Source of the DNA: Macrostomum lignano
Taxonomy: Eukaryota
Assembly (NCBI GenBank): GCA_002269645.1
Contig: NIVC01000293.1
Span: 372,001-436,000, forward strand
DNA: 64,000 bases
Direction: 5' to 3'
The first letter of the stretch is position 1. The number at the start of each line of letters is the position of its first letter. Position numbers and translations under genes: made by a program. This document shows, piece after piece, positions 1,244-42,604 of this stretch. Under the pieces are notes generated by a model. The model was not told the origin of the DNA and made no database searches. It was given only the letters and a program-made list of their open reading frames with translations.

Positions 1244-4200
1244 ATGGCGTCGCGACTGAACGAGTTGCAACTCGAGAAACCCGAGCGGGCTCTGACCTGG
1301 CTGAAGGCTTTCCAGGCGTTGGCCCGTGCGAAAGGCTGGAAGGATGAAGGCAACGATTTTGCAATTGCGAACAATTTCCTGGCTACATGTGGCCTCAGTG
1401 CCTTTGAGAAATTAGAAAGCCTGGTGGCTCCAAAAAAATCGAGACTTTGAAGTTTGCGGATCTAGAAAAAGCACTTCTCTCGTATCTCCGACCGAAGGAG
1501 AAACTGACTGTTGCGGAACGCACGCGGTTTTTTCATGTGCGTCAGCGGCCTGATGAAACGGTTTGCGATTTTCTCTCGCGCCTTCGCACTGCGGCCACGG
1601 ACTGCAAGTTTGACGAATTGCGGTCTTGTGCAAGTCCTGCCGAGGAGCTGATTCGACTGGCTTTGATTTCGGGAATGCGAGATCATCGGACTCAACAGCG
1701 TATTTTAGAAACAATGCAAACTGACGACATGTCAATTGAAGACATTGGGGATTTTGTCCGCAACCAGGAGCAAGTGGCTGCTTTTATTGTCTCTACCGGT
1801 GCGGATGCCAATAGCGTTCAATCTAACAGTGCTACTGCCTCTACGAGCATTTCCTCTGCAGCTACGGATGCTGGCACATTGCATTATTCCCAGGCCAGCC
1901 ACACAAAGAAATCAGATGGCTATAAACGTGTTGTTACGGACTGCAGGTTCTGTGGGAAATCACACCCGCAAGGCAAGTGCCCGGCATTTGGTAAGACATG
2001 CACGAAATGTTCCAAAAGAAATCACTTTAGTGCAGTTTGTCGCTCACAACCATCAAAATCCGTGCACAACGTTTCCGAGACTGAGACCTCTGCAGACGAG
2101 GGTGCCACCCTCCCATCAATGGATGTCTTGCATCTCTCCGATTCACATTCGGTTAATTCCGTAGATATCGTTACCGAAAATCTCCTTATCAACGGCCGTC
2201 ATATCGCCATGCAGATTGATACGGGAGCCTCTGTGTCCGTTCTTTCCAGTACCCTCTGGGAATCGCTTGGCCGACCCACGCTTCAGAAGTGCACTCGCCG
2301 ACTAGAAGCCTACGACGGTCATGCTCTTAAAGCGCTCGGCAAACTGTGCACCACCGTTGAGATGAATGGTCGCCTCAATCCCGCTGAACTCATGGTAATT
2401 GTAACAGGTAGGATTTTGTGTCCATCCTGCCTGCACCTTCTGCTCACGTCGGATAACAAAGAATTGAACTCGAAGCACGGTTTTCTGGGCCCAGGCTGCT
2501 GCGGCCTACAGCCCAGCCGAGGCAATGGCCATGCCTTTAGGCCCGCAGATGCGGGCGGGAGAAAGTGAAGCGAGCGCCTCCACTGTCTCTCCTTTTATTT
2601 AAAAACACTGCAGAACATGCGCGTGGGAACGTAAACTCTTATAGGCTACATAGAACAAAATGCGAATTACGCGGCAAGTTTTAGGTGCAGCCGTCCTTTG
2701 CAAATATGACTGCATTCTATGCAGCTCATAGTAATATCCTCCTCTAAGAAATACAGGCTTCTCGGCCGAGATCTGCTTGAGTCAGAGAGACTATTCCATG
2801 TGTCTGTGCCTACATCTGCGACTGCGCCGCAGATAGTTGCGCCTCTTCCGACGATCAAAGGAGTTAAGGCCACGATGGAACTTGTTGCTGGAGCGAAGCC
2901 TCGTTTTTGCCGTGCCCGAGCTGTGCCAATTGCTCGTGAGTCTCAAGTGAATGCGGAACTGGACCGGCTGCAACAGCTCGGCGTAATTGAGCCTATCGAT
3001 GGTCCAGTAGAGAATGCGTCTCCAGTTGTTTGGGTCACAAAAAAAGACGGCACTTTAAGGATGTGTGCGGACTACAAGGTTCATGTTAATTCCAAAATAA
3101 AATCAGATTCTTATCCTATCCCAAACATCGAGGGGATGTTCGCTAAACTAAAGAACGCCAAAAGGTTTGCCAGCATTGACCTACGATCAGCGTATTGGCA
3201 GATTGAGTTAGATGAGGCGGCTCGTGATCTGTCCGTGATAAATACCTCACGTGGTCTGTACAGGGTGAATCGATTGCAAATGGGTATGAAGAACGCCTCT
3301 TTCATTTTTCAGCGCACAATGGAGGCTATTCTATCCGACTTGAAAGGGCTGCTGATTTACCAAGATGACATTCTTGTATTCGCCGATAACCATGACTCCT
3401 TGCAGAAGCGTCTGATGGCAGTCAAGAAACGCTTGGAGGAGAAGCGCGTTACCATCAACGAGGCTAAGTGCATTGACTACTGTGACGAGATTTCTTTCCT
3501 AGGCTTCAAGATCTCCGCCGCTGGCATTCAACCTGATGATCGCCTCGTTGAAAAGGTTTGCCAAATCGCTACGCCCGCAAACAAGCAAGAGGTATCGCAG
3601 TTTCTGGGTCTCGTCAACTTTTGCGGCCGACTAATCCCAAAATAATCCCAAATTTCACCGCTAAAACACGCGCGTTAAACAATCTTCGCAAGGCTAGCAC
3701 AGCGTTTGTCTGGGATTCCCGTTGCTCTGAGGAATTTGAAAATCTGAAGCGTGAGATTAGCTCCGCTCCTGTCATAAGGCCGTACAGTTTAGAGAAACCA
3801 GTCACTTTGACTACCGATGCCTCCAAAGGTGCCGTGGCTGGCGTACTCACGCAGGAAGGACATCCCATCATCTATGTTTCGAGAACGTTATCAAAAGCTG
3901 AGGAAAACTACTCAAACATTGAGCGCGAGGCGCTTGCAGTTTTCTGGGCAATCAATCGCCTTAGACAATACCTCCTAGGAAGAAATTTTACTATCCAGAC
4001 AGATCATCAGCCGCTACTTCGCCTCTTTGGTGGCGAGGTGCCCACGCACACCTCGGCTAGAATTGGTCGCTGGGCGCTTGCGCTTATGCAGTATGACTTC
4101 CAAATTCAATATGTTAGTGGTCCTCAAATTCCCCATGCCGACGCACTATCCCGCCTGCGTTTCACTAAAGCGTCGCCCGATCCAAAGGAAATTTCTGATG

Positions 4201-5381
4201 CGATCAACTGCGTGGTATTCGAAACCTCAACCATTGACTCTAAGCGTATACTGGCGGAGATGGATTCTGACCCTCTTGTTCAGAAGATAATTCAGCGCGT
4301 GCGCTCTGGAGACTGGTCGAAGTGCTCTCAGGCGGAATCCCCATTCAAAAAAGTCGCGGATCGCCTCACTATGGAAACTGGCCTGCTATTCAAGCAGAGA
4401 CGCATCTTTATTCCGCCTCGCCTACGTCTCGAAGCCTTTAACACTATTCACAACACGCACTTGGGCGCGCAAGCCTCTTACAATCTACTAGCCTCATCGT
4501 GTTGGTGGCCTGGGATGCGGCTTGATGTTGAACAATTTGTGCGTCGATGTTCTGGATGCAATCAGCTACGACCGCGACTGCTCAAAGAAAGAGACACTTG
4601 GCCAGCATCTACTTTTCCTTTCCAGCGGATCCACATCGATTGGGCGTATGTAAAGGACATTGGAAATATCCTAATTGTCGTCGATACGTTTTCAGGATGG
4701 ATAGAAGCTTTTCCGTCGCGTGACAGATCAGGAGATAGCGTTGTTCGGTCCCTAATTACCGTATTTTCTCGATTTGGTGTACCCGAACTACTTGTGTCGG
4801 ACAACGCACCTGAGTTTACTGGTGATCCCCTATCCTCATTCCTACGCGCCAACGGCGTTCGGAAATTGGAGTCACCTCCGTACTACCCTCAGGCAAATGG
4901 ATCGGCGGAGCGGGCAGTTCGTACTGTCAAGACGGCGTTGAGAGCGTGGACCGAGCGCGTCACCCACATGGAGTTTCTCCGCTTCCTTCAGAAGGTACTT
5001 TTCCACCATCGCAATTCGTCCATGTCCCGAGGTAAATGCCCGGCGGAATTGGTCTTTGGCAGACGACTGCGCGTGCCCGTAGTTTCACCTTTCGTTCAGG
5101 GGGAGACGGTCCACTACAAACCACATGAATCGTCGTCAGGCACCCCCGCGACCTTTGTGATGACTGCAGGCAGGAACACGGCGTGGGTTCTCGCTGACAG
5201 TCGGTTGCAGTTAGCTAGCACTAATCAGCTGGCGCCTCAAAACCAGCCTTCAGACGCCGATGACGATGATGAAGATGCTGTTCCCACATCCAATGCAGAC
5301 GTGCCGCCCGATGACCAACAGCAGGCCCAACTGAGACGAAGTTTGCGAGACCGTCGACCTCCCGAGAGATTCACCCTATAG
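1244..5381 (+). pseudogene. Gypsy gag-pol polyprotein broken by three lesions
   Basis: ORF pieces 1244-1450, 1447-2399, 2736-3645 and 3558-5381. Lesions: one missing A in the A7 run at 1432-1438; a 336-bp insertion including its TSD at 2400-2735; an 11-bp duplication (taatcccaaa) near 3632-3652. Confidence 0.93.
2400..2730. mobile_element. 331-bp solo-LTR-like insertion in the Gypsy protease
   Basis: Flanked by a GTAAT duplication (2395-2399, 2731-2735); begins TGTAACA and ends CATA. Removing it restores AELMVISSSKKYRLLGRD in frame. Confidence 0.75.
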
Positions 5382-6209: not shown

Positions 6210-9200
6210 CGTTCTTATTGCTCCTAGCAGTGAGAAGGACGCTCAGCAGCTGCTCCAGTGGCTGCCGACTGTCTCCTTGGATGCTGACTTCGGCAGAGCC
6301 CTTTTTCTTCGCGAAGGCCTGCGTCCAAAGATAATACCCTACGTGGTTTTTGTCCCTGCAAAGAGCACCGCAGCTGGACCAGACATAATCCGCCGGGTCC
6401 TACAGCATCTGAATCCCGACCTCCCTGCTAGTGGACTGGTGTATCACCAATGTCCGCAGGGGTAAGTCAATTTTCCTCGGCCTTTCAAACGCTTGGGCGA
6501 GTCGGTACCCTAACGGATCCTCCTTCCAGCTGGGTGCCCTCAAGCTCAAGATGCGCCGAGGAAAGTCTGCCAAAGGTAAGGCTACTGCCAACCCCGGCAT
6601 CTCCGGCAAGAGCGGGGCGCAGTCTGATGTCCAAGGAAAGGCGCAAGCCGACCCCAAAGCCGAAGCTGCGTCTCGCCCCTCTGCTAGCAGCAATTCGGCG
6701 ACCGTGGTGACGGCTCCGGCCAAGCCCCGGGAACCGAACCTGCCAGACGGAGGAGTTGAGGATGAGGCCGGATCTTCGGAGTCCGAGCTCTCCTCGGCCA
6801 CCCTGGTGGGGTCTGAAGGCAAGGATGCAGATGAAGAAGCTTCTTCTATCCTGTTATCGGAGCCCAAGGGCTCTGCTGGGGGGGGGGGCTGGTGGGGGTG
6901 AGGAGGCCATGGACGTCGACCAACTCCCATCTCCGAGTTAAGCCCCCAACGGCCTGAGACGAGGACGATTTGCTGCGGGGTTCTAGCCAGCTATTGCATT
7001 TAATACAGTATGACTAAGCTCCACGCTGCCAAAGAGCGAAATTCTGTCTGCAAAAGAATTTACAGCATTGTCGGCTGATTTTCCATGCAAGAATGGCATT
7101 CTTGCACTCTTTTGCGTGCAGGAATGGATGTCTATGGTAAAATCTCACTGAAAAAGCATTAGGCGCAGAAATGCATTCCTGCACGGTTTTGTGCATTCCT
7201 GCACGATGAATCATCCGACAATGGAATTCCTTCACGTTCACTCGTGCGTGAAGGACATCGTGCACTCGTGCGCTAGCGCGCACTCGTGCAGATGTCATTC
7301 CCGCACTCGTGACCGTGCAGGAATATATCATTGCTGTCGGATTTCCATCCTCTAAATATTTGTACTTTCGGTTTTGCAATTCAGCCTTGTGCTTTTCAGT
7401 TAGCCGACTCCCTTCGTCTACCATGCTCTTCCCCACAGACAATCTCAACCGTTAATTCACCATAGATAGTTCAACTAACCTGTTTATTATTGTTAGTATA
7501 AATACGACTTCAACCCGCGGCTGAGATTGCCCCGAATTCTGCCCGCTATTCAATTATACCTCGTATTAGCTCGTATTAGTCCATTCGACAATTGCATATC
7601 TGCGTCAGTAAATCTGATGAAGATTACTGAGCTGTACAGGCCAGGCCTCATCCTGATCCAGGAACCCTGGATGCGCAGCGGTAAGCTGCCCAACGTTCCT
7701 TCTGGCTACTCTGATTTTTGTGTTTGGCCCGGGGAACAGCCGCCCTAGAGCGGCTATCCTCGCTGCCAGCCATCTCCAGGCTTGGCTGAGGACTGATCTT
7801 TCAGATGGAGACCTCTGTGTCATCCAATCTAATCATCTCTCTCCGCGTATGTGTCTCGTTGCTTCGATTTATATTCCAGGCGACAGAGACCCTACACCTG
7901 AGAGTCTACTGCGCCTTGCCCAGTACTGCGAGTCCCAGAACGCTGAGCTGTGCTTGGGGGGCGACCTCAACGCACACCATAAGCACTGGGGCAGCAAAGA
8001 CACCAATACTAGGGGGGAGGAGCTTCTGGCCCTTATCTCTAATACAAACCTCATGCTCTGCAACCGCGGTAGCACTCCTACCTTTAACAATGGCAGATGG
8101 AATGCGGTCCTCGATGCCACACTCGTTACCCCAATACTCTTTGACAGAGTTGAGGAGTGGAGAGTCTGGTCTGAGGAGCCCTCCCTGTCTGACCACTGCT
8201 TTATCGCATTTGACATTGCGGACACTAAACCCCAGTCCTCGATTACTTGGAGGCGTAATATCCGCAACACGGATTGGGCGGCCTATAAGGCTACCCTTGA
8301 TCTGCACCTGCAGGAACTCACGGACTTACGTCCATTTGAGACCTGCGAGGATGTGGACCATACGCTGAGACGCTGACAGGTTGCATTATTGCAGCCGTTG
8401 AAGCGGCCTGCCCTGTCCGTGCCTACAAAGGCACGACCTCGGCGCCCTGGTGGAACCCGGAGCTGGGGAAACAGGCGGAAACCCAAAAGCCTTCACCGCC
8501 GTGCCATGAAGACGGGAAACCCGGAGGACATGGAGCTTTTCCGGCAAGCCTCCCGCAACTTCAAATCTGAAGTGCGCAAGGCCAAGGAATGTAAATGGCG
8601 CCAGTTCTGCAATGAGTCTGATCAAGACAGACCTTACTTTTAGGCTTGTCAAGGCCCTTACAATGGACGAATGTCCAAATTAGCCATGATCAGAAAAGAT
8701 GATGGCTCTCTTACTGAAAACCCTGAAGAAGTGCTTCAACATATGCTCAGCACATTCTTCCCGAGGGTACCCACTGCTAGATCGGAACCCAACCATTCGA
8801 TGGATGGAGCCACCCTAGCGACGGGCATTATCACTGAAGACTTGATCGCTCGCAAAACCTTCAAGCCTTTCAAATCTCATGGACCTGATGGTATCTACCC
8901 TGTTCTTCTTTGTGAAGCAGCCAAGATACCCTCGTTCTTGAGACTTACCCGCAATCTCATGCGGGCCTCTATCCAGCTGGGGGGATACGTTCCCAAGTGC
9001 TGGCCCGAAGCTCGGGTAGTCTTCATTCCCAAACCTTGGAAGGGTGACTACAAGAGCGTCAAGGCACTCAGGCCAATTAGCTTAACATCAGCAATGCTTA
9101 AGCTCACTGAGAGGCGGCTGGTTTCATGCGAGCTCACAGCGATGCCCCTCAGCAATAATCAGTACGCCTTCCGTACCGGGAGGTCGACTGATAGCACCCT

Positions 9201-10760
9201 GCATGCGATAGTCGAGAAGATTAAACGGGCGGTACTGGGTGACGGACGACGGTTACGCCCTGGCTCTTTCTCTCGACATTGTTGGCGCCTTCGACAACGT
9301 CATTTTTGAAGCGTTTCAGAGGGCCCTTCAAAATCGCAAAGCTCATGCTACTCTCATACGGTGGATCATGTACGTGATGTCCACCCGTATGGTCACTGCC
9401 CAACTCCTAGGGCAAACTGCCTCCGCCAGAGTCTGTAAGGGTGGACCCCAAGGCGGAGTCCTCACCAAGACGCTCTTTTGGGAGAGCAGTCATGGACGCT
9501 CTTCTGGGCGACTCCCGACCTTATTCCGTCTTCAAAGTCGGGTATGCTGACGATGTCACTGCCATTGTGGCAGGGCCGTCCCCCAGCACGCTCAGGGATC
9601 TGATGCAGAGCTCTATCCGCAAAACAGAATTCTGGGCCAATGACAATTGTTTGGAACTCTCTGAGCCCAAAACTGTTGCTATTATATTCACCAGCAGAAT
9701 ACGCTGGAACATACGACCTCTGCAGTCATACGGCAGAGATATTGCCTTCGCGCACCAGACCAGATGTCTCGGGGTCATACTTGACCACCGGCTCAACTGG
9801 TCCTCCCACGTGAAAGCAAAAGTCAGGCGTGCCTCAGCCATTCTGGCCCAGCTCCGACAAGTAGATCAACTCCATGGTCTTCCAAAATGAAGACTGAAGC
9901 ACTGCAGAGCTTCTCGCCACTGGCGTAACCGGTAGGAACATCATTTTCCATTCGGACAGCCAAGCTGCCTTGCACGCCATCAGTGGCTGTAGTACCGATT
10001 CTGCTACAGTCCTCGACTGTATCAAACTCCTCAACATGTTGGGCTCCACCAACAAAATCACCCCTAAGTGGGTTCCGGGGCATGTGGGGATCCGAGGAAA
10101 TGAGTTGACTGACGCCCTAGCGAAAGTTGGTATCTCCGGCTCCTCTCTCGTGCCTGAACCCATTGTCCCGATCCCCGGCTGCGTCATCGTCTCGCGCATC
10201 AAAACGTGGATCAGAACTCAGCACCACTCGACTTATGCGAACTGCACTACCTGCAGGCAATCAAGAGGCGCTGTCCCTCAGCCCTCTCACTAGCTTCGGA
10301 AGCTCCTCCTGCGTCTCTCGCGTAGAGACATTCGGGCTGCCACCATGACCCTCTCAGGCCACGGCTGCTTCTCCAGGCACCAGTACCTGCAGGGCAACTC
10401 CATCTGCAGTTTTTGCAACTCAGGTGACGAAACCGCTGAGCACTTCGTCAGCATCTGTCCCGACTTTACGCGAGCCAGACTCACTTACCTCGGGCTACAT
10501 ACATCTATTACTGAAGCGTGCAAACCCAAAAAACTTTAATCAGCCCATGCGCTACCTCCGGGCCACCCGCAGGGCTGAACTCTCCTTTCTAGAGAGCACC
10601 ATAGCTGGCTGGCGACACAGGGGGACCTCCCTGGGCGGCGCCAACCCTCCGTTCATAGCGATGCGTCGGCTGTTCAGGGATTGCGGAATGGGCGTCCGCG
10701 CCTTCCCGCTGTGTCCCTCTCCGGGGCAGCCCTGCAGCTAAGTCAGTTAAGTCAAGTTCT
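6210..10760 (+). mobile_element. 5'-truncated, degenerate non-LTR retrotransposon (R1/LOA-like, with RNase H)
   Basis: ORF1 remnant 6210-6940. APE (LIQEPW, GDLNAH, SDH) about 7590-8230. RT (RPISLT, YADD) about 8670-9800. Partial RNase H (DSQAAL, WVPGHVGIRGNELTD) about 9900-10130. C-terminal CCHC (CSFC...HFVSIC). AAGTC-like tail. TSD TGAATGATC at 6201-6209 and 10761-10769. Many frameshifts. Confidence 0.9.
7003..7585. other. About 580-bp unrelated insert at the LINE ORF1/ORF2 junction
   Basis: Separates the start of the endonuclease (..cagctattgcat | aattgcatatct..NCISASVNL). Contains four CACTCGTG motifs and tandem CTCGTATTAG. No clear TIR or TSD found. Confidence 0.4.
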
Positions 10761-12534
10761 TGAATGATCAATTAACCAATTTTTAACGCTCTCCCAAAGA
10801 CAAGCCAATTACTTGGAATGCTTTGAAACCCTCTTTTGCATGAACAATTAAAGTGTTCAAATCTTTTCAAAATACCCGTTTTTTGCCCTCGCAACTCGAA
10901 AGCATTAAAATTTTAATGAGGATGGCATGCGCGGCTAGATTTACGGAATGACTAAAAATAGTGCTTCATTACTATAACGAGCTTAATTTACTAAACATTC
11001 AAAGTTCGACTTATGATCGCAGACAGTAAATTATTTGTACTTTCCCAATTGGAAAGCTTGGTTTATCTACGTAAATATACGTAGATTTTTTTAACGTAAA
11101 TTTTACGTGAATGTTGTTCGTGGGTATTACGTATAATTTTCGTGTTCCATGGATATATATAACAAACAACTTTTAACTAAAATTTGCTCCACAGTATTTT
11201 ATTTTTGAATATTGTCTGCATATTTGAACAGGTTCATCATATACTTTCGCGAAGGTCTACTCTTTGAGCAGAAGCGTAAAGGCAGCAATAACGATTGTGG
11301 TCAATGATTTGCCTTATGCAATTAGTGTTTTATTAAATTAGATTAAGTGTTTCTTTTAATGGGATAATTCACAATTTTTTTCCTGAGCATACAACAAAAA
11401 ATTAGAGTTATATTTGTTTTAACGTGTTGTTTTAAAATCTAAATTTCAAACTGATTTACTCTTCCATTCGCGTTCGCGCCCAGGCCGGAAACATGCATGG
11501 ACTGGACTAAACATGGAAGTGTTTAGTTAGTGAGAGGTGGATTAATTAACACATGTAAACGTAACTCCAATTGCGAATTACTCTAATAGTTACAGTGTAT
11601 AATGGTGATAAGATTTCTTGTCGCTGTTGTTTGATTTCACGACTATAACATGCAGTTAAAAGTCTCACTGTCTCTGGCTGATTTTGATTGCTAGTCATAC
11701 TCATAAACACATTGTGAAACCGTTTGGCCCCAATAATTTAAACTGGAATCTGCAGATCTGTTGTATTGCATTAAGTTCTAGAACAGATGGTTACTTACAT
11801 CTCCTCCTTCTTATCCTTCTATTTACACAGGCCTACAAATTTTACTTGAAATGCTGAAATCTCAGACATTGACAATGTCAATATTTAGCTATTGAGTAGG
11901 TCTATTGGCCTATATGTAGCTGTTGACCTATTGTTTCACCAGACTACTAGCTTAGCTAATAACTAGAATTGTTGGTCAATTGTATTGTACTTATATATTT
12001 TATTTTTGCTAGTTGCTAACTATAGTATAATAACTTTTTATGCTTTTGCCAAGATTTGGTTGTGGGTGGTAGACTGGTAGGTAGCAAAATATTTTCCTTT
12101 TTTATAATGATATTTATTGCTAGGTTCGACATTTATTGCTAATTTATTGCTAATTGACATTTATTGCTAATTTATAATGAACCAGATCATTAAATTTACC
12201 ATTCTACCAATGTTAATAGGCTAAATAAACAAAATTTTTAAATAAAGTTTAAAATAAATATATCTTATAGTTTTGCTTTATTGGCAAAGACTAGATAGCC
12301 TTGCTGATTATTCTTATATTATAACTAAAGTAATAAAAAAGTCTTATATATAAATAATACCTATTGCTGCGTATTGCACTAGAGCATCCTCTAACACATT
12401 AATCTGCCATAGTTATTCTGTGGTACTGAGAAATATAATTTTAACTTTAATTATGAATATTTTAAATTTTGATATTTACTTTTACCCTATTAATTTATTT
12501 TACAATTTCTCTTTCTTTCAGTAATATCATATCT

Positions 12535-14568
12535 ATGGTTCCTAATAACCAAAAAAAACATGAACGAAATGTTAAAAAACTTATGAAAAAGATTATTCAT
12601 AGCAAATATCAAGTAAGAACAGCAAGGTCTAATTCTAATTGTTTGGAATCAGCATCAACTGAATTAGAGGCATCTTTGTTCTTAGAGGCTTGTTCAACTG
12701 ATGGACCAAATCTTCAATCTAGATCTAACAGTTCTGAAATTATAGATCAGATAGATCAAAGTTCAATTGCAAGCAGTACATCTATTGATGTTTGGCCAGA
12801 AGCAAGCTCTACTAGTGAAAATAGTATTCCTGATGATAGCATAAATCAATTTATTAAACAATGGGTAATCAAATTCAACATTCCTATCTATAGTCTAGAT
12901 GTACTACTACCACGGCTACAAGAGAAATATCCTACTTTACCCAAGTGTGGTAAAACACTTTTGAAAGCAAATCTTCCTCAGCCAATTATCCAGGCTATTT
13001 CAACTGGCCAAATAGCATACTTTGGTCTGAGGTGTTTTCTTAACAATAAGGACTTTTCCTTCTGTAATCAGGCTGATTTGGTTGTTTTTGTTGATGGTTT
13101 CTCACTTGCTAAGTCTTCAACTTCATCTTGCTGGGCAGTCTTAGGACTATTAGGATCTAATGAAACACCTTTTGTCATTGCTATCTATCAAGGACATGTA
13201 AAACCAACAGCTTCAGAATTGATGTCACCTTTAATTAATGAAATCAATGAGCTTATGTCAGACCCAAGTCAAACACGTTTAAATTTGAAGTATATTCTGG
13301 CTGATACACCTGCTCGAGCACTTATCAAGTGTATTAAAGGACATACTGCTTTTTATTCCTGTGATCGTTGCGTTATCCGTGGACAAAGAGTTGAAGGTCG
13401 AATTGTGTTTGATGACTTTTCTGTAGTGCCACTTAGAAGTAACCAGTCTTTTCGTTCAAAGATTGATCATCATCATCATTCAGGAACATCTCCACTATTG
13501 GCTCTTGCAACATTCAACATGATATCTCAGCTTCCCTATGACTTCATGCATTTACTTTGCCTTGGAGTAGTTAAGCGCATGATTTCTTTTTGGCATTGTG
13601 GTCCACTTGGAATTTCTAGACTGACTAGTAGGGCTCGAGTAGCAATCTCAGAGAGGCTAGAGTTAATACGGACATTTATGCCTTCTGAGTTCAACAGAAA
13701 GACTAGACCTCTTGCCCAGTATAAATTATGGAAAGCAACTGAGTTTCGTACTTTCTTGTTGTACACTGGAATATGTGCATTAAAGAATAACTGGATTCCA
13801 CGTCAAATTTTTCGGAACTTCTGTCTACTTTTCATTATTGCTCGAATTATGTGCTCTAGTAGTATTGAAGGGCATAGGAAGAACATGGTTGCTCGTCTTA
13901 TTAGAGTTTATTTACGAAGTTGCAAGCAAAGTTATTCTAGAATCTTCTTAGTTTATAATTTGCATGCACTGCTGCATCTTCCAGATGATTGTGAGTTATA
14001 TGGTTGTCTTGACTCTTTTAGTGCTTTTCGGTTTGAAAATGCTCTTGGCTTCTTGAGGCGGCGTGTTAGAAGTGGTAACTTGCCATTCATGCAGCTTGTA
14101 AACCGAATTAGAGAAGTAACACAAGTTACAACTGTAAATCTGCAAGGCTCTCAACAGAAAAACATTGAATTTTTTGAAAAAGTGAGTGACTGCCTTCCAA
14201 GAAACATTGCACTGCAAATTGATTTCCAACCAATTTTTTTTGCCCAAGCTAAATTTCAAGGACTGCAACTATCTGTCAAACATCAGAGAGACAGCTATTT
14301 TAGTTTTAATGGTGTAGCTACTAAGCTATCAAAGATTTTTACTCGAGCTGATTGTTCATCCATCTATGTCATTGCAAGATGCTTCAAACAAAAAGAAGAC
14401 TATTTTAATTTTCCATGCAATAGCAAGTCACTTGGAATTTTCATTGCCTCAAAGCTCTCAGATACTTTTGTAATGTTTGAGCTTACAGATCCAGTTACAA
14501 AGCTTTTTGCTATGCCTCTTGGTGAGGATTATGACGAGGAGTCAGTGCTCATTGTTCCAATGATTTAG
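12535..14568 (+). CDS. EnSpm/CACTA-type transposase (open, about 677 aa)
   Basis: Motifs DGF, LADTPARA...GH..FYSCDRC, DFMHLLCLGVVKR, WKATEFRTFLLY, YNLHALLHL, SAFRFEN. ATG at 12535 follows an acceptor tttcag at 12521. Confidence 0.9.
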   Translation: MVPNNQKKHERNVKKLMKKIIHSKYQVRTARSNSNCLESASTELEASLFLEACSTDGPNLQSRSNSSEIIDQIDQSSIASSTSIDVWPEASSTSENSIPDDSINQFIKQWVIKFNIPIYSLDVLLPRLQEKYPTLPKCGKTLLKANLPQPIIQAISTGQIAYFGLRCFLNNKDFSFCNQADLVVFVDGFSLAKSSTSSCWAVLGLLGSNETPFVIAIYQGHVKPTASELMSPLINEINELMSDPSQTRLNLKYILADTPARALIKCIKGHTAFYSCDRCVIRGQRVEGRIVFDDFSVVPLRSNQSFRSKIDHHHHSGTSPLLALATFNMISQLPYDFMHLLCLGVVKRMISFWHCGPLGISRLTSRARVAISERLELIRTFMPSEFNRKTRPLAQYKLWKATEFRTFLLYTGICALKNNWIPRQIFRNFCLLFIIARIMCSSSIEGHRKNMVARLIRVYLRSCKQSYSRIFLVYNLHALLHLPDDCELYGCLDSFSAFRFENALGFLRRRVRSGNLPFMQLVNRIREVTQVTTVNLQGSQQKNIEFFEKVSDCLPRNIALQIDFQPIFFAQAKFQGLQLSVKHQRDSYFSFNGVATKLSKIFTRADCSSIYVIARCFKQKEDYFNFPCNSKSLGIFIASKLSDTFVMFELTDPVTKLFAMPLGEDYDEESVLIVPMI

Positions 14569-15134
14569 CTGGAACAGCTAGGATTACAAGCTTAACTAGG
14601 TAAATGTTTTTCAAGATATATTATTAATTCATTTGAAATATAATTCCTGAAATATACTTGAAATACTTGAAGATTTCTCTGATTTCGATAATCATTCCAA
14701 TCCCAAGTAAAAAGATTGTTACTCTTATTACACCACTTTCAGATGCATTCGAGCAACCAGGCTTTCACAATAGTCGAGTTTCTGGAGGACAAGTCAGTTG
14801 ATTATGTACCATCGATTTGGCTATTAGCTTCGGACAGTGTTGCCTACCCCACTTCGCAATCAACTAGTCGAGTCGCCTCTTTACGTTCAAAAATGGAAAA
14901 GCCTACAGCTACACTTGAGCCACTATGGCTGCGGTTTGCGCTAGGCTTGCCTTGAGCAAACCGGCTTTAGTGCCCAAGCGCGCTGCGTCTGTGGTGCGCC
15001 CCCCCCCGCCGCGTGTGTACGTTCTGTGTTGTTTAGGTGGGCGCCCACCCCTCCGCCGGCGGGGGGGGGGTATTTTACTCCAGCCGCGCTGCTGAGTTGG
15101 CAGTGTTTTCGCGCAGTTCTTTTTTTGAACTCTA

Positions 15135-15330
15135 ATGCCAATCGCTGAATCATGGCTAGCACTGACACTGTCAAGTCACTGCGCGATTGCGTTGATGTCC
15201 TTACGGCATGGTTTGAGTGTGCGAGCCTTTCATGTGCCGGGAGAGTTTCAAATTCTCGCCGATGCAGCGTCTCGGTTGCACGAGCGCAGTCAGTTGATTA
15301 ATTTTTTATTTCGCTGCTATGGCAACTTGT
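15135..15330 (+). pseudogene. C-terminal remnant of DIRS-type RNase H
   Basis: HGLSVRAFHVPGEFQILADAASR resembles the H(I/V)PG..N..AD.LSR end of DIRS RNase H. It abuts A1, implying deletion of gag and RT. Confidence 0.65.
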
Positions 15331-16387
15331 GCCCGTTTGCTTTGCAATCAATGCATCGACATGCTTTCTGCCCTGCCTCTGCCCACTTTCTTCATTTTCA
15401 GGCCGTCCAGCTGCGCCAGACTCTCTCAGCCGCCGGGCCGCGTCGCTGCTAGGCGTCTCTTATGCACCACGGTCAAGGCAGGCGGTGGCAAGGCACATCC
15501 GTGAGTGGCTAGCTTACTGCAAGCAGACCCGCTGCAGTCCTGTATCCTGTCCGCTGAACAGCCTGCTCGACTACCTGGCCAGCCTAGTCGGGACGCGTTT
15601 GCGTGCGTACGGCAGCGTTGCTTCTGTCGCCAGCTCGCTGTCCGTTTGGTTTCGCATCAACTCTGCACCAGACCTGACGAAGCATGCCGCCACGACTCTC
15701 CTCCTGCGAGGCGCCAAGCGAGAGCTGGGACTTCGGGTGTCGAGAAAACGACCAGTATCGCCGCTCATGTTGTCGGAGATTCATCAGCGAGTCAGTCGTT
15801 CTGATGGGCTTCAGCTGGCATGCTGGGCAGTCACCATCTGCTGTTGGTGGGGCATGCTCCGAAAATCCAGCGTGCTGCCGACTTCGGGAAAAGGTCCGGC
15901 ACGTGTGCGCTGCGCTGACATCTTTCGACACCCGCGAGGTCTGATCTTGCGCCTGGAGCAAGGGAAGACTCTCCAGTTCAAAGAGCGGGTGCACCAGGTG
16001 CTTCTACCAAGGCTAGTGAGGCGGACGTCGCTGTGCCCGGTGTTAGCAATCGAGCAGCACGCAAGATTCAATAATCTGCAATCGGCTGATGCGCCTCTGT
16101 TCACTTATCGCGACGCCGGAGGCAACCAGCGGCTGCTGACGGGCAGGCAGCTCGATCGCTTCCTAGCGGACAAGCTAGGGGCTGCGGGCTTCAGGCGTGA
16201 GCACTTCTCAGCCCACAGCCTCCGCCGTGGCGGCGCGACCTGGGCCTCGGTGTTGGGTGTGCCGGTGCCCGACATCATGCGGATCGGTGACTGGAAGAGC
16301 GACTCAGTGCAGCGGTATCTCCCGCAGTCGCAGCAGGGCTTCGCAGCTTCCGTCGTGTTTGCTAGAGGTGTGGGATCCCTCGTTTGA
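15329..16387 (+). CDS. Tyrosine recombinase (DIRS/Ngaro type), intact
   Basis: Catalytic residues in order: R (MLRKSSV), K (QGKT), HSLRRGGAT, GDWKSDSVQRY. N-terminal SAM-like core-binding region (YAPRSRQAVARHIREWLAYC). Confidence 0.92.
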   Translation: MPVCFAINASTCFLPCLCPLSSFSGRPAAPDSLSRRAASLLGVSYAPRSRQAVARHIREWLAYCKQTRCSPVSCPLNSLLDYLASLVGTRLRAYGSVASVASSLSVWFRINSAPDLTKHAATTLLLRGAKRELGLRVSRKRPVSPLMLSEIHQRVSRSDGLQLACWAVTICCWWGMLRKSSVLPTSGKGPARVRCADIFRHPRGLILRLEQGKTLQFKERVHQVLLPRLVRRTSLCPVLAIEQHARFNNLQSADAPLFTYRDAGGNQRLLTGRQLDRFLADKLGAAGFRREHFSAHSLRRGGATWASVLGVPVPDIMRIGDWKSDSVQRYLPQSQQGFAASVVFARGVGSLV

Positions 16388-17218
16388 CGTTGGCATCAGC
16401 TTTTCGATGTTCCGTTTCCTTCTATGTTTTTTTTTTTCTTTCGCGCGCTTTCCCGTTCTTGCTTTGGCTTTGGAGGCCTCGTTACTGCTTTCGCTTTCGC
16501 CAACATCGCGTATTCGTGTTTTGCTTTGGGGCACTAAGGCTGCGGTTTGCGCTAGGCTTGCCTTGAGCAAACCGGCTTTAGTGCCCAAGCGCGCTGCGTC
16601 TGTGGTGCGCCCCCCCCCGCCGCGTGTGTACGTTCTGTGTTGTTTAGGTGGGCGCCCACCCCTCCGCCGGCGGGGGGGGGGGTATTTTACTCCAGCCGCG
16701 CTGCTGAGTTGGCAGTGTTTTCGCGCAGTTCTTTTTTTTCTTCTTCTTTTATCCTTATTCTTTTAATCATTAAAATATAAATAAAGAGGCCTCGTTACTG
16801 CTTTCGCTTTCGCCAACATCGCGTATTCGTGTTTTGCTTTGGGGCACTAAGGCGTTCATGCTCTATTAGAGTCTTAGGTATGGCATCAACTGAACGAAAA
16901 GCACGCGAAAAGCTAAAGAAGCTAGAAGCTGCTGCTGCTGCGGGCGAGGATACACCTGGTCTGGAGACTACTGACTCAGAAGCACCTAGGCAAAGAAAAC
17001 CAGTTCATCGACTTATCGATATGGAACCAACACAGAAAAAGCGTAAGAAGAATAAATATGTATCAAGTGATGACGAGTCGTCGAAGTCTAAATCCGATTC
17101 GGAGACTGAATCCGAAACTGATATGCTGCAGCAAGAGGACGTTGGTGATATTGGCTCGCTATTTTCGCTCCATGGTTGTTCTGCCAGTGCCAGTTCGCAT
17201 CGACAAGATGACGAGACG

Positions 17219-17680
17219 TCTGCTGCTAGCGTCGCTAGCTCAAATCCATCAACAGCTGGACAGTCTGCAAGCGCCTACAACTCGGTTCAACGACAGAAGC
17301 AAGCATCTGCTGCTAGCTTCGCTAGCTCAAATCACTCAGCAGTTGGACAGTCTGCAAGCGCCTGCAACTCGGTTCAACGACAGAAGCAAGCATCTGCTGC
17401 TAGTGCTAGCGTCGCTAGCTCAAATCACTCAGCAGCTGGACGGTCTGCAAGCGCCTACAACTCGGTTCAACGACAGAAGCAAGCATCTGCTGCTAGTGCT
17501 AGCGTCGCTAGCTCAAATCACTCAGCAGCTGGACGGTCTGCAAGCGCCTACAACTCTGTTCAACGACAGAAGCAAGCATCTGCTGCTAGTGCTAGCGTCG
17601 CTAGCTCAAATCACTCAGCAGCTGGACGGTCTGCAAGCGCCTGCAGCTCGGTTCAACGACAAGAAACAGCCGCTAGCATG
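17219..17680 (+). repeat. Coding tandem repeat (5 units of 87-93 bp) in CACTA ORF2
   Basis: Units start at 17219, 17306, 17393, 17486 and 17579 and encode SAAS(AS)VASSNHSAAGRSASAYNSVQRQKQA. Confidence 0.9.
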
Positions 17681-20398
17681 AATTTCTCTGGTCGGTCGGT
17701 GTAAGTGCGGGCCTGGGTGATTTCAATGTATAATCCAAACCACTAAAATATTCGCTTTTGAAAGCTTAATTGTCATGCTCTTTAACCTCATCCATTCAGT
17801 CCTGCTACACCGGTACAATCGGCAGCTGGCTGCTCGCTTGAATACACCAGTGATGATGACGACACCATTGGACCAGGCCCACTGGACAGTCATTTGACTC
17901 CAAGCCCATCGCGACGGGCGGATAATGCTGCTCCATTGGGTACAAGTTTTTTGTCGCAATTTTGCGCAGAGGAAAACTTTCGTTACACGGGAGATGACGA
18001 GACGACTTTAATGCGTTTAGTTTGCTCCACATTTTCTTTAGCGAAGGAAAATAACCAGCTGCTAAAACAACTGGCGGCTAGTCGTCAAATGCCCCAGCTT
18101 GCAAAGCTAAATTTGCCCTTTGTGCTGCCAGTAAGCACAAAGGACGAATTGGATCAGCTGGAACAGTACTTAAGGATTCCTAAACAATCAACCATGCTGG
18201 CCTCCTATATCGGCTGCATGGTTTCTGATTCTCAGCGCAAAGCCGTTTTTATGTTAATGCCAAAGTTTATCACTACGCAATTGGCTGCGTCTTTTAATTA
18301 CGAAGGCAAAAGAGGTGGAAAGGCTGCCTTCAAGGATTTTGCTAACACAATTTCCTTGGTTAGGCGACTGGTAGCCCAGGGTAGCAAGTCGGGCAAGTGC
18401 GAATCAAATATAGTTAAAACAGCCATTGCCGACTGGCTCCGTCAGGCGCCTGCCCGCCTTAAGGCGACCTAGCTGGCTCCCTTGCACTAGTTCTTATTTG
18501 TTTGTTGAAACTTGAAAGCTAGTAGTTATAGAGATCCACAATCCGCGACGGAATTATTTCAGTCAGTTGCATTTTAGTCTTATATGCAGAAGTAACTACA
18601 CATGGTGAAGAAATCAGTGGTATACAATCAATCCATGCAGTTAGTAGTTACTTATTTACTTAAAAGTATAAAAAACATCTCCAAATCACAAAATAGCGTA
18701 AGATAGGTCACTTTCCACCTATTACCTACCCTACCCAACTCAATTACCTAGACCTAGAGCTACTCCTAAATTAGTTCTACCCATTAAAAAAATTATTTGG
18801 GGGATATAAACTACAATGCTAGAAATCTTCAATCTAGGAAAATAATTTTCACGAGCACTTTAGGAATAATTGATTGCTCCTTTGCCTTTGAGATTTGACT
18901 TGCTTTTTAGACTAATCCACTACTAATGGTAGCTAATCTACAACAGTTACAAATATATTCAAGATATGAGTAGAAAGGCAATTTTCTAAATAGAATCCTC
19001 GTGCCGAGCCCGTAATGTTACTTTTGCCTCTTCCGTTTCTCTTCCTACCTTAATTCTTGCAGATGCCACCTGCTCTAAAAGCGTGCCGTTTCTCTTCCTG
19101 CCTTGAATCTTGCAAATTTGAATTCAGCCTTTAACTTTTTCTTGTGTCTTTTCTCAATATTTATTTTCGCTCCTATTTTTTAATTAAGTAATCTTTTTTG
19201 CATGCTGAAATTAGGTGCAAACATTGCAGTCTTTACTTTTTCATGTTCTATAGTTTTGTATACTTGGGTGTTATATATATATTTCATAATGCCAATAATA
19301 AAACATACTATGGGTGCGACTTGAAACAGAACGGTAAAAAATACCGTTAATTCAGTCAAATGTAGTGAAGAAACATATAATTAAGAGTATATTTTAATCT
19401 TCGCGTTCTGTGTTCCATTACTTAATTACTATTTAAGAAAAATTAAACTGTAAATTGCTTGCCCGAAGAAGTTAAGTGGTGAGAAAAATATGCACCAATG
19501 GTTTGTGGCTTAAAATCTAATTAGAACCTGACGATTATATTACTATACGAGCTAATTAAGCTGTTTTAGGACGTTAATCTCCTGCGTAGATAATACGTAC
19601 ATTATTCGTAAAATCAGATACGTAGATTTAAAGCATTTTCACGCGACACTTTCAACGTGAAATCTACGTAAAATATCTACGTATATTCTACCAAAGTTTT
19701 GTTGATATTTAACGTAATTTTAACGTAAATTTTGCGTAACTTTTCCAGTTGGGTTAGCCTAAGAAGTCATGTCACACTTTCAGTCATGTTGCTTTTTACG
19801 CTCAGACTATCAAACCGCTAGAGAGTAGTTTTGCAAAACAAAGTCAAGTGGACCATGGTATCTGCCCCAAATCGTCAAAAATTGTTTATGGTCCATACCG
19901 GTAGCACAGGTACAAGCCCAGCATTGAATTTAAGTAAGACATAATACACGCAGAGCAGTTAAAGTCAGAAAAGCCTTTTCCGCCGTTCAACTGGAGCTGT
20001 ATAGTCCACCAGACTACGACCGTACCGTACATGTACAGGATTTCGTTCCATGGATCCAGGCAAAGAATTTTGGATGGCATCGCGGTTTCCAAGAGTGCAG
20101 CCTATAGTTGGAGTCTGCGATATTGACCACAAATATGGTCTAACAGATGTAGTTTTGACTTTTTAGATTACATATATACACAGATTTTGACTTTTGCACT
20201 CGGATGAAAAAAGTTCATGAGTGCTGAAAATTAATGGGCGATGTGAACTTTATAGCGCCCCTGCAGTTTTCACAGTGTTCAGTTTTTTATACTTGAAATT
20301 TTCGTTAAACAAATTAAACAAACGGGTCTATGAATTTTGCTAACCAAAGTCTGGAAGCCGAATATGCTAAATGTATTGTACTTAGCTCACCTATCTAT

Positions 20399-38900: not shown

Positions 38901-40221
38901 ATCCTCAGTTGCTGGGCCAGCCTCCCAGATCCTCAGTTGCTAGGCCAGCCTCCCAGATCCTCAGTTTCTGGGCCAGCCTCCCAGATCCTCAGTTGCTGGG
39001 CCAGCCTCCCAGATCCTCAGTTGCTGTGGCACTAGCCTCCCAGATCCTCAGTTGCTGGGATACTAGCCTCCCAGATCCTCAGGTTGCTGTGGGATACTAG
39101 CCTCCCAGATACTTGCTGGGCCAGCCTCCCAGATCCTCAGTTGCTGGGCCAGCCTCCCAGATCCTCAGTTGCTGGGCCAGCCTCCCAGATCCTCAGTTTC
39201 TGGGCCAGCCTCCCAGATCCTCAGTTGCTAGGCCAGCCTCCCAGATCCTCAGTTGCTAGGCCAGCCTCCCAGATCCTCAGTTTCTGGGCCAGCCTCCCAG
39301 ATCCTCAGTTGCTGGGCCAGCCTCCCAGATCCTCAGTTGCTGTGGCACTAGCCTCCCAGATCCTCAGTTGCTGGGATACTAGCCTCCCAGATCCTCAGGT
39401 TGCTGTGGGATACTAGCCTCCCAGATACTTGCTGGGCCAGCCTCCCAGATCCTCAGTTGCTGGGCCAGCCTCCCAGATCCTCAGTTGCTGGGCCAGCCTC
39501 CCAGATCCTCAGTTTCTGGGCCAGCCTCCCAGATCCTCAGTTGCTGGGCCAGCCTCCCAGATCCTCAGTTTCTGGGCCAGCCTCCCAGATCCTCAGTTGC
39601 TGGGCCAGCCTCCCAGATCCTCAGTTGCTGGGCCAGCCTCCCAGATCCGCAGTTGCTGGGCCAACCACCCAGATCCTCAGTTGCTGGGCAGACAGCCTCC
39701 CAGATCCTCAGTTGCTGGGCCAGTCAGTTACTCTCCATCACACCCCACCCCGCAGCATCAACGGCATGATCGACCCTTCGCCGCCTCTGGTCCAAGGCAC
39801 CAAGCGCTACTTCGCTCCTGAGATCCTGGACTCGAGCCTGGACACCCGCTGCTTCGAGTCTCTGACCCAGGCTGACATGTACGCATTTGCGCTGGTAGTG
39901 TGGGAGACTCTGCTGCGCTGCCGTCTCCCAGACTCCGATCCCGTGCCCTATCGGCTGCCATTCAGTGAGCACGCTCCCAACGACCCGTCTGTCGAGCTGA
40001 TGCAATCTCTAGTCTGCGAACAGGCACTCAGGCCGACCGTGTGCCAGCACTGGCTGACGAGTTCCTACTCATCAGCTGTTGTTGAAATGATGACCGAATG
40101 CTGGCAGCACAGGGCCAGCGCTCGGCTGACCTCCCTTCGGGTGAAGAAATGCCTTCGGGATTTGGACGAGTCGTTTCGTCGAAGTGATGTACAAGGAGCT
40201 GAGGCTGATGGCAATTGTTAG
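35947..40221 (+). CDS. TGF-beta family type I receptor Ser/Thr kinase, BMPR1/ALK3/6/Tkv-like
   Basis: Exons 35947-36837, 37488-37957 and 39756-40221, in phase. Signal peptide, Cys-rich ectodomain ending [11 protein letters not shown] helix, GS box [37 protein letters not shown]45 loop [12 protein letters not shown] and [11 protein letters not shown] resemble ALK3/6. Confidence 0.93.
36870..37300 (+). repeat. About 45-bp pyrimidine-rich minisatellite, receptor intron 1
   Basis: TGTAATCTCACCCTTCTGATCTCTTATCTCCCCCTTTGGTTTT units. Confidence 0.9.
37995..39722 (+). repeat. 28/33-bp minisatellite with higher-order structure, receptor intron 2
   Basis: CCTCCCAGATCCTCAGTTGCTG(TGGGATACTAG/GGCCAG) units. 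Confidence 0.97.
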
Positions 40222-42560: not shown

Positions 42561-42604
42561 ATAAGGGTCACACGCCATCCTGCACCCCCGCCAACGCCCC
42601 GCAG

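What the first reader, a model, noticed from the sequence alone, without database searches (positions are those of the whole stretch)
14921..16860. Recombinase-only mini-Ngaro inserted at a look-alike of its own att site; exact excision would switch the CACTA ORF2 back on
Seen: the layout is A1-RH remnant-intact YR-B1-A2-B2. Left junction cactatGGC|tgcgg; right junction cactaaGGC|gttca; internal B1/A2 junction cactaaGGCtgcgg. The empty site CACTATGGC therefore matches the element junction CACTAAGGC at 8/9 positions. Recombination between the two GGC cores would give a circle whose junction equals B1/A2 and would restore ...LEPLWRSCSIRVLG... in the host ORF2. Established: DIRS-order Ngaro/PAT elements have split direct repeats and integrate circles with a tyrosine recombinase. 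Inference: an RT-less, YR-intact derivative could be mobilised in trans, move as a DNA circle (Crypton-like), or act as a reversible switch or hyperparasite of the CACTA family.
Basis: partly seen in the sequence, partly recalled or inferred. Interest (0 to 1): 0.78.

Follow-up and report, generated by a model that had tools for sequence, protein, structure and literature searches.

The report
Deleted Ngaro retrotransposon inside a DNA transposon
A young 1.9-kb flatworm (Macrostomum lignano) Ngaro retrotransposon has lost its gag-like gene and reverse transcriptase but kept its tyrosine recombinase; it sits, without a target duplication, in a gene of a DNA transposon at a site resembling its own end, which fits the known integration model and is not a new kind of system.

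Summary

**Structure.** The layout is A1 - 11-codon ORF1 stub - RNase H tail - intact Cre-like tyrosine recombinase (YR) - B1|A2 - spacer with AATAAA - B2.

**Empty site.** The window is Macrostomum lignano (GCA_002269645.1). Four paralogous copies of the 8.7-kb host transposon carry exactly the predicted empty site, ...GAGCCACTATGGC|GTTCATG..., with ORF2 open across it.

**Integration.** There is no target-site duplication. One GGC is shared, and B2 joined to A1 equals B1|A2 exactly.

**Target similarity.** The target matches the B terminus at 12 of 15 positions. Only 2 of 124,124 positions in the emptied window match as well. The A side shows no similarity.

**Fit to the known model.** This matches the published DIRS-order model, in which a circle junction recombines with a genomic trinucleotide and leaves no duplication.

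**What is not supported or not testable:**
- Multicopy status of the RT-less form could not be tested here.
- Movement as a DNA circle and a "reversible switch" have no evidence for them.
- The host belongs to the EnSpm/CACTA superfamily only by distant homology. Its termini are CCCAAYTGG, not CACTA.

**Verdict:** a new member of a known kind, of moderate interest.

The parts
11044..19753 (+). Host DNA transposon, 8.7 kb without the insert. It has imperfect TIRs of about 13 bp (CCCAATTGGAAAG / CCCAACTGGAAAAG). Transposase ORF is 12469-14568. ORF2 starts at 14743. A DUF4806 exon lies at 17894-18472.
   Evidence: Boundaries come from four paralogous copies with different flanks. Transposase homologues carry PF02992 or PF13960. 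DUF4806 hit.
14915..14929 (+). Target half-site in host ORF2: TTGAGCCACTATGGC, which matches the last 15 nt of B (TTGGGGCACTAAGGC) at 12/15. The GGC is the shared core.
14930..15126 (+). A1 repeat (197 nt), ending in a T-run. It contains the inner inverted repeat CGGTTTGC/GCAAACCG and an inverted copy of GGGCACTAA at 14967-14975.
15127..15184 (+). 5' leader plus the ORF1 (gag-like, SAP-type) start. ATG at 15152 reads MASTDTVKSLR. An upstream ATG at 15135 is in the pol frame. The deletion breakpoint lies at about 15183 +/- 3.
   Evidence: The ORF1 N-termini of L002 (MSEGPSQSVKDLRTAL) and L009 start 17-25 nt after A. The similarity is weak and rests mainly on position.
15183..15452 (+). C-terminal RNase H tail of pol (...AFHVPGEFQILADAASR...FLHFQ), equivalent to pol residues about 501-590. 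ORF1 remainder, RT and most of RH (about 2.5 kb) are missing.
15302..15308 (+). T_TTT_TTA heptamer in the pol frame, at the point where the -1 (YR) frame opens after the TAA at 15299-15301. Candidate frameshift site; evidence is weak.
   Evidence: The heptamer is not conserved in L001 or L002, and no downstream structure was found.
15302..16387 (+). Tyrosine recombinase reading frame (listed ORF 15329-16387, 352 aa). It has no in-frame ATG near its start and lies in the -1 frame relative to pol, as in relatives. All catalytic residues are present.
16473..16540 (+). B1 repeat (68 nt), ending GGGGCACTAAGGC.
16529..16586 (+). Long imperfect palindrome (hairpin) spanning the B1|A2 junction. It is complete only when B is joined to A.
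   Evidence: -24.6 kcal/mol, z -4.25, 0 of 200 shuffles fold as well. GGGCACTAA occurs exactly 4 times in the window, all inside the element.
16541..16738 (+). A2 repeat (198 nt).
16739..16785 (+). AT-rich spacer between A2 and B2, with AATAAA at 16780-16785 abutting B2. Likely polyadenylation signal (inference).
   Evidence: sequence.
16786..16853 (+). B2 repeat (68 nt). The right end of the element is ...CACTAAGGC|gttcat.
14743..17704 (+). Host ORF2 exon 1 (14743-14929 plus 16854-17704), split after codon W of LEPLW by the insert. It contains a 93-nt tandem repeat at 17224-17661.

Best explanation
This is a recently inserted, internally deleted, non-autonomous copy of a Ngaro-type tyrosine-recombinase retrotransposon of Macrostomum lignano. 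A roughly 2.5-kb deletion joins ORF1 codon 11 to the C-terminal tail of RNase H. It removes the gag-like ORF1, RT and most of RH. It leaves all cis repeats (A1, B1|A2, B2) and the YR gene.

The element entered as a closed circle whose B|A junction recombined with a genomic site sharing the GGC core and a 12/15 match to the B terminus. The recombinase was its own or that of a full-length helper. The site lies in exon 1 of ORF2 of a young EnSpm/CACTA-superfamily DNA transposon. No target duplication was made.

Shown:
- the anatomy of the element;
- the empty site;
- the absence of a TSD;
- the non-random target similarity;
- homology of the remnants to RT-bearing relatives.

Inferred:
- the circular intermediate and YR catalysis, taken from the published DIRS-order model;
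- that the deletion predates integration, for example by template switching during reverse transcription;
- that RT was supplied in trans.
For: - Split direct repeats A1-[...]-B1A2-B2 are present, and B2+A1 equals B1A2.
- Four paralogous empty sites show precise insertion without a TSD and a single shared GGC.
- 12/15 identity to the B end is reached by only 2 of 124,124 positions, and by only 2 of about 1769 GGC sites.
- The YR is full length with all catalytic residues.
- The nearest relatives are ORF1(SAP)-RT/RH-YR elements with no methyltransferase. In L002 and L001 the YR lies in the -1 frame relative to pol, as in the window. L009 has the same gene order, with its own start codon for the YR.
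- The RH tail and the ORF1 start abut at about 15183.
- The repeats are identical, so the insertion is young.
- Published model: recombination between the 3-bp circle junction and an identical genomic sequence, with no TSD (PMC3266345; PMC7192593).
- Multi-copy deletion variants of Ngaro, and Ngaro nesting inside other mobile elements, are already described in Cafeteria (PMC8547959).
Against: - No full-length parent and no second copy could be retrieved. The M. lignano genome is not searchable at the DNA level with these tools, and neither the YR nor a matching pol is annotated. Deletion before integration is therefore not distinguished from deletion in situ.
- The YR has no conventional start codon. 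Its expression needs frameshifting or readthrough, and only a non-conserved slippery heptamer supports that.
- Target selection rests on a single insertion.
- The circular intermediate is itself contested for DIRS-1, where mostly linear single-stranded cDNA was detected (PMC7192593).
Confidence: 0.8

Rival explanations
1. The RT-less, YR-only form is an amplified non-autonomous family. Many copies would share the same ORF1/RH breakpoint. They would be mobilised by RT in trans or by their own YR, with a CACTA(A/T)GGC-like target preference.
For: All cis repeats and the YR are intact and the repeats are identical. Target similarity is non-random. Multi-copy 5'-deleted Ngaro variants exist in Cafeteria (PMC8547959), and SIRE is a non-autonomous VIPER derivative (PMC6681497).
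Against: No second copy was found in the 64-kb window or in about 110 kb of other M. lignano loci. Four paralogous host copies with the identical 15-nt target are unoccupied. An intact ORF in a very young copy says nothing about selection.
Confidence: 0.25
2. The element now moves as double-stranded DNA only. YR-mediated excision would give a circle that re-integrates (Crypton-like), so it could act as a reversible switch of the host transposon's ORF2.
For: Simple Cre-like recombinases are reversible. The left and right junctions each retain a half-site, and precise excision would restore ORF2. The coding content is YR only.
Against: - There is no evidence of excision. The empty sites seen are paralogues with different flanks, not alleles.
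- The structure is the canonical retrotransposition product.
- The nearest YR relatives are RT-linked, not Cryptons.
- The YR lacks its own start codon.
- Restoring an ORF is true of any precise excision and is not evidence of a switch.
Confidence: 0.05
3. A full-length Ngaro inserted here, and the 2.5-kb internal deletion happened afterwards in situ. On this reading it is a dead, single-copy remnant.
For: It is single-copy as far as could be seen. The breakpoint is a simple junction with no filler.
Against: The insertion is very young: there are 0 substitutions in 265 nt of paired repeats. A later deletion sparing every cis element and the whole YR would have had to follow quickly. Deletions arising during reverse transcription are common in retroelements (general knowledge).
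Confidence: 0.2

Closest known systems
Ngaro superfamily of tyrosine-recombinase retrotransposons (order DIRS), e.g. DrNgaro1 and the Cafeteria burkhardae Ngaro types 1-4
   Same: - Same A1-[ORFs]-B1A2B2 split direct repeats.
- Cre-like YR downstream of RT/RH, with no methyltransferase.
- GC-rich insert in AT-rich DNA.
- Nesting inside another mobile element.
- Existence of internally or 5'-deleted variants (PMC8547959, PMC4157794).
   Different: - This copy lacks RT, most of RH and ORF1.
- The target resembles 12/15 nt of the B terminus, not only a trinucleotide.
- The B|A junction lies inside a long palindrome.
DIRS1-like integration model (3-bp circle junction recombines with an identical genomic trinucleotide, no TSD)
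   Same: One GGC at the internal junction, one GGC at each end of the integrated copy, and a single GGC in the empty site, with no duplication (PMC3266345, PMC7192593).
   Different: DIRS1 has inverted terminal repeats plus an ICR, and mostly NTT trinucleotides. Here the repeats are direct and the core is the GC-rich GGC.
SIRE / VIPER (non-autonomous derivative of a YR retrotransposon in Trypanosoma cruzi)
   Same: It is a non-autonomous derivative of a split-direct-repeat YR retroelement (PMC6681497).
   Different: SIRE corresponds to the A2-B2 region only and encodes nothing. This element keeps a complete YR gene and all four repeats.
Crypton DNA transposons
   Same: The coding capacity is reduced to a tyrosine recombinase. 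Insertion occurs at a site sharing a short sequence with the element, without a true TSD (PMC3212892, PMC13465315).
   Different: Cryptons have no long terminal or split repeats and no RH remnant. The relatives of this YR are RT-linked Ngaro-type elements, and no DUF3504 match was found.

Membership tests
Ngaro (order DIRS) | Split direct repeats in the order A1-[ORFs]-B1A2-B2 | tested here: met
   A1 and A2 are 197/198 nt and differ by 1 indel. B1 and B2 are 68 nt and 100% identical. B1 abuts A2.
Ngaro (order DIRS) | Encodes a tyrosine recombinase with the R..K..HxxR..W/H..Y catalytic set | tested here: met
   Aligned to Cre over residues 56-331. R178, K213, H296, R299, W322 and Y330 are invariant among 19 relatives. 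The Pfam PF00589 match for this protein alone is below threshold (E 1e-3).
Ngaro (order DIRS) | Encodes RT/RNase H upstream of the YR | tested here: not met
   Only the last roughly 75-90 residues of RH remain. Relatives L002, L001 and L009 have RT/RH directly upstream of the YR. This copy is therefore a deletion derivative, not an autonomous member.
Ngaro (order DIRS) | No methyltransferase domain between RH and YR (distinguishes Ngaro from DIRS1 and PAT) | tested here: met
   The RH tail runs directly into the overlapping YR frame in the window, L002 and L009.
Ngaro (order DIRS) | Integration without a target-site duplication, at a short sequence shared with the circle junction | tested here: met
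   Four paralogous empty sites. A single GGC in the empty site is also found at the internal junction.
Ngaro (order DIRS) | Retrotransposition through an RNA and circular cDNA intermediate | not testable with these tools
   Needs RNA or cDNA data, or a retrotransposition assay.
Crypton | YR is the only transposition gene, with no RT remnant and no long terminal or split repeats (only 4-6 bp direct repeats) | tested here: not met
   An RH remnant and 197-nt and 68-nt split repeats are present.
Crypton | YR groups with Crypton YRs (e.g. DUF3504 for CryptonA) | tested here: not met
   No DUF3504 match. The closest homologues are linked to RT/RH. A formal phylogeny with reference Cryptons was not done.
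EnSpm/CACTA (CMC) superfamily, for the host element | Transposase homologous to Tnp2 / Transposase_21 | tested here: inconclusive
   The 699-aa protein itself has no Pfam hit. Several homologues at 28-33% identity carry PF02992 or PF13960.
EnSpm/CACTA (CMC) superfamily, for the host element | CACTA termini and a 3-bp TSD | tested here: not met
   The termini are CCCAATTGG...CCAGTTGGG. Flanking repeats are 2 bp in 4 of 5 copies and 3 bp in one. From my own knowledge, CCC termini with 2-bp TSDs occur in the Mirage-like branch of CMC; this was not checked.

The most novel reading that the evidence does not exclude
The RT-less form is a self-sufficient, multicopy YR element that has dropped reverse transcription. 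It would move as a DNA circle using its palindromic B|A junction as an att site. That would be a retrotransposon caught turning into a Crypton-like DNA transposon, with sequence-directed targeting of an EnSpm-superfamily transposon gene.
Probability: 0.07. Interest if true: 0.8.

Novelty: new member of a known kind. Interest (0 to 1): 0.35.

Why it matters
This locus gives an unusually clean natural demonstration of DIRS-order integration. The evidence is a filled site, four exact empty paralogues, no duplication and one shared trinucleotide.

It adds two details that are not part of the standard description:
- The homology between target and element extends to 12 of 15 nt, on the B side only.
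- The B|A junction sits inside a long palindrome that exists only when B is joined to A.

Both details give concrete candidates for the recombinase's recognition site, which has never been defined experimentally for any eukaryotic YR retrotransposon.

The recombinase-only derivative would matter more if it proved to be a family. It would then bear on how YR retrotransposons and YR-only DNA transposons (Cryptons) are related. As a single copy, it is an ordinary deletion derivative.

Tried and rejected
**1. Copy number and parent.**
- The YR search found nothing above 56% identity and no self-hit.
- A pol profile that included the window's RH tail found no M. lignano protein.
- The family is therefore unannotated. 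The flatworm genome is not in any DNA collection offered, so copy number and parent could not be determined.

**2. Metagenome scan for relatives with flanks.** It returned 80 loci, all at 41% identity or less (most near 30%). Contigs collapse or end inside the repeats, so no target sites could be read.

**3. Programmed -1 frameshift for YR expression.** A canonical T_TTT_TTA lies exactly where the YR frame opens. It is absent from L001 and L002, and no stimulatory structure follows it. It is kept only as a weak lead.

**4. Spliced-RNA origin of the deletion.** This is not testable without the parent. The abutting ORF1 and RH homologies fit a simple deletion.

**5. Known RNA families.** Nothing was found (one chance hit far below threshold).

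**6. Literal CACTA identity of the host.** Rejected on the termini.

**7. A symmetric Cre/lox-like core.** Two inverted arms 6-8 bp apart around GGC were sought. Only 5 of 9 positions match on the A side and none match in the target, so this is not convincing.
Full report
**What is there**

- A1 (14930-15126) and A2 (16541-16738) are identical except for one extra G in a homopolymer run.
- B1 (16473-16540) and B2 (16786-16853) are identical.
- B1 abuts A2.
- A 47-nt AT-rich spacer separates A2 from B2. It ends in AATAAA (16780-16785), directly against B2.

The insert is therefore 14930-16853, 1924 bp. No other copy of any part of the element exists in the 64-kb window.

**Coding content**

The only long intact ORF is 15329-16387 (352 aa).
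- It aligns almost end to end with Cre recombinase (query 56-331; PDB E about 3e-3).
- It gives a sub-threshold PF00589 match.
- It has 83 homologues in the protein collection, many with a precomputed PF00589 domain.
- In an alignment of 19 relatives, the catalytic residues R178, K213, H296, R299, W322 and Y330 are invariant and all present in the window protein.

Two of the closest relatives sit on contigs that also encode RT.
- L002 (Logan, 47% YR identity) carries ORF1 with a SAP domain, then RT/RH (661 aa), then the YR.
- L001 (JGI, 56% identity) has RT/RH upstream of the YR.

Window 15183-15413 aligns to residues 501-576 of the L002 pol and to the equivalent part of L001. This region includes the terminal RNase H motif AFHVPG..ADA.SR. 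The "RH remnant" is therefore real.

In addition, the ATG at 15152 opens MASTDTVKSLRD. This resembles the ORF1 N-termini of L002 (MSEGPSQSVKDLRTAL) and of a second M. lignano Ngaro, L009, and lies at the same short distance after A. The ORF1 similarity ends where the RH similarity begins, at about 15183. The element is thus a simple internal deletion of roughly 2.5 kb that joins ORF1 codon 11 to the RH tail. The ORF1 part of this argument is weak and rests mainly on position.

**How the recombinase could be made**

In the window, L001 and L002, the YR frame has no nearby ATG and lies in the -1 frame relative to pol, opening at the same place. In the window:
- the frame opens immediately after a TAA at 15299-15301;
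- a canonical T_TTT_TTA heptamer in the pol frame occupies 15302-15308.

The heptamer is not conserved in the relatives, and no stimulatory structure follows it. Frameshifting is only a lead. The ORF1 ATG at 15152 is also in the YR frame, separated from it by that single TAA. "Intact YR" is therefore true of the ORF, but its expression is unproven.

**Provenance and the empty site**

The host transposase ORF (12469-14568) has a 100% match in the collection. Its contig is Macrostomum lignano GCA_002269645.1 NIVC01000293.1. Its 90% cluster holds four other M. lignano proteins. I fetched their loci (L005-L008).
- All four are copies of the same 8.7-kb element (window 11044-19753), 99.2-99.8% identical, at different genomic places.
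- All four lack the insert and read ...GAGCCACTATGGC|GTTCATGCTC....
- In all four, the reading frame ...LEPLWRSCSIRVLGMASTERK... is open across the site.

The empty site has one GGC. The filled site has GGC on the host side of A1 and GGC as the last three bases of B2. The internal B1|A2 junction has one GGC. There is no target-site duplication, and B2 joined to A1 reproduces B1|A2 exactly over 60 nt.

**Is the target a look-alike of the element's junction?**

Yes, on one side.
- The 15 nt left of the crossover (TTGAGCCACTATGGC) match the last 15 nt of B (TTGGGGCACTAAGGC) at 12 positions.
- In the emptied window, only 2 of 124,124 positions on both strands reach 12/15, and 22 reach 8/9.
- Among about 1769 GGC sites, only 2 reach 12/15.
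- Allowing for my choice among about ten motif lengths, the result remains near 1e-4.
- The A side shows no similarity (1/6, 2/10).

All four empty paralogues carry the identical 15-mer and are unoccupied. The site is permissive, but it is not a hotspot that fills up.

**Junction structure**

The B|A junction lies inside a long imperfect palindrome.
- The B end plus the first 10 nt of A pair with A positions about 27-46 (-24.6 kcal/mol, z -4.25).
- The 9-mer GGGCACTAA occurs exactly four times in the window, all in the element. Two are at the B ends on the + strand and two are inverted inside A1 and A2.
- At the integrated left end the host sequence replaces the outer arm, and the long hairpin is lost.
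- A different M. lignano Ngaro family (L009) also has a strong hairpin at the start of A (z -5.35).

Whether this palindrome is the recombinase's site or a replication structure cannot be told from sequence.

**Comparison with what is known**

- The A1-[ORFs]-B1A2B2 arrangement, a Cre-like YR downstream of RT/RH and the absence of a methyltransferase define Ngaro (PMC8547959, PMC4157794, PMC13465315).
- The published integration model for the order is recombination between the 3-bp circle junction and an identical genomic sequence, without a TSD. It leaves the trinucleotide at both ends (PMC3266345, PMC7192593). This is exactly what the locus shows.
- Ngaro elements nested preferentially in other mobile elements, multi-copy deletion variants and solo AB repeats are described in Cafeteria (PMC8547959).
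- A non-autonomous derivative of VIPER (SIRE) is known (PMC6681497).
- Cryptons share the YR-only coding content and microhomology with the target. They lack long repeats, and their YRs are not the relatives found here (PMC3212892).

**The host element**

- The transposase has no Pfam hit itself. Homologues at about 30% identity carry Transposase_21 or DUF4218 domains, and some are fused to DUF4806. Assignment to the EnSpm/CACTA (CMC) superfamily is reasonable.
- The termini are CCCAATTGGAAAG / CCCAACTGGAAAAG, with 2-bp flanking repeats in four of five copies. They are not CACTA.
- The "CACTA" inside the att-like core is a coincidence of letters.

**What could not be settled**

- Neither the YR nor a matching pol of this family is annotated in M. 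lignano.
- No DNA collection available here holds the flatworm genome. Copy number, the full-length parent and a target-site logo are out of reach.
- A metagenome scan returned only distant relatives, on contigs that end in the repeats.
- The claims that the RT-less form is a family, moves as DNA or serves as a switch remain untested. Nothing seen favours them over a one-off deletion derivative.

**Verdict**

This is a new member of a known kind: a deletion derivative of a Ngaro retrotransposon that integrated by the known site-specific route. Its moderately interesting details are the one-sided 12/15 target homology and the palindromic junction.

Noticed in passing
L009:6860-11542 (M. lignano NIVC01000342.1): A full-length Ngaro of a different family. 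It has a SAP-type ORF1 from 7126, pol at 8579-10104, an annotated YR at 10001-11041, and A1/A2 96-98% identical. A 41-nt segment (gccattccttgtcttgcc...ggtttaa) occurs three times: at the left end, at the internal junction, and (38/41) right after B2. Either the split repeats overlap in this family, or the element sits next to a look-alike of its own junction.
   Followed up: partly
window 1447-5381: Ty3/gypsy-type LTR retrotransposon genes (gag / aspartyl protease, RT, RNase H, integrase) in three consecutive ORFs.
   Followed up: no
window 9970-10540: ORFs with a non-LTR-type RNase H signature (GHVGIRGNELTDALAK), just upstream of the host transposon's left end at 11044.
   Followed up: no
window 35947-40221 and 42530-43255: Cellular genes downstream of the TE cluster. 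One is a TGF-beta type I receptor-like gene (activin receptor domain, GS motif, kinase). The other is ATG5. The only other 12/15 match to the Ngaro B end in the window lies at 43448 on the minus strand, near ATG5.
   Followed up: no
window 16937-18472 (L004 14409-15944): Only in the Ngaro-bearing copy is the downstream part of ORF2 annotated as a gene. The model (478 aa, 5'-partial, with DUF4806) starts 83 nt after the Ngaro end. The four empty paralogues have no ORF2 gene model. This could be an annotation accident, or it could hint at transcription reading out of the insert.
   Followed up: no
window 17224-17661: A 93-nt tandem repeat (4.8 copies, 93% matches) inside host ORF2, encoding a serine/alanine-rich repeat. 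Copy number differs between paralogues; L005 has an extra unit.
   Followed up: no
window 14919-14929: The target core GCCACTATGGC is itself a small palindrome (GCCA-CTA-TGGC).
   Followed up: no
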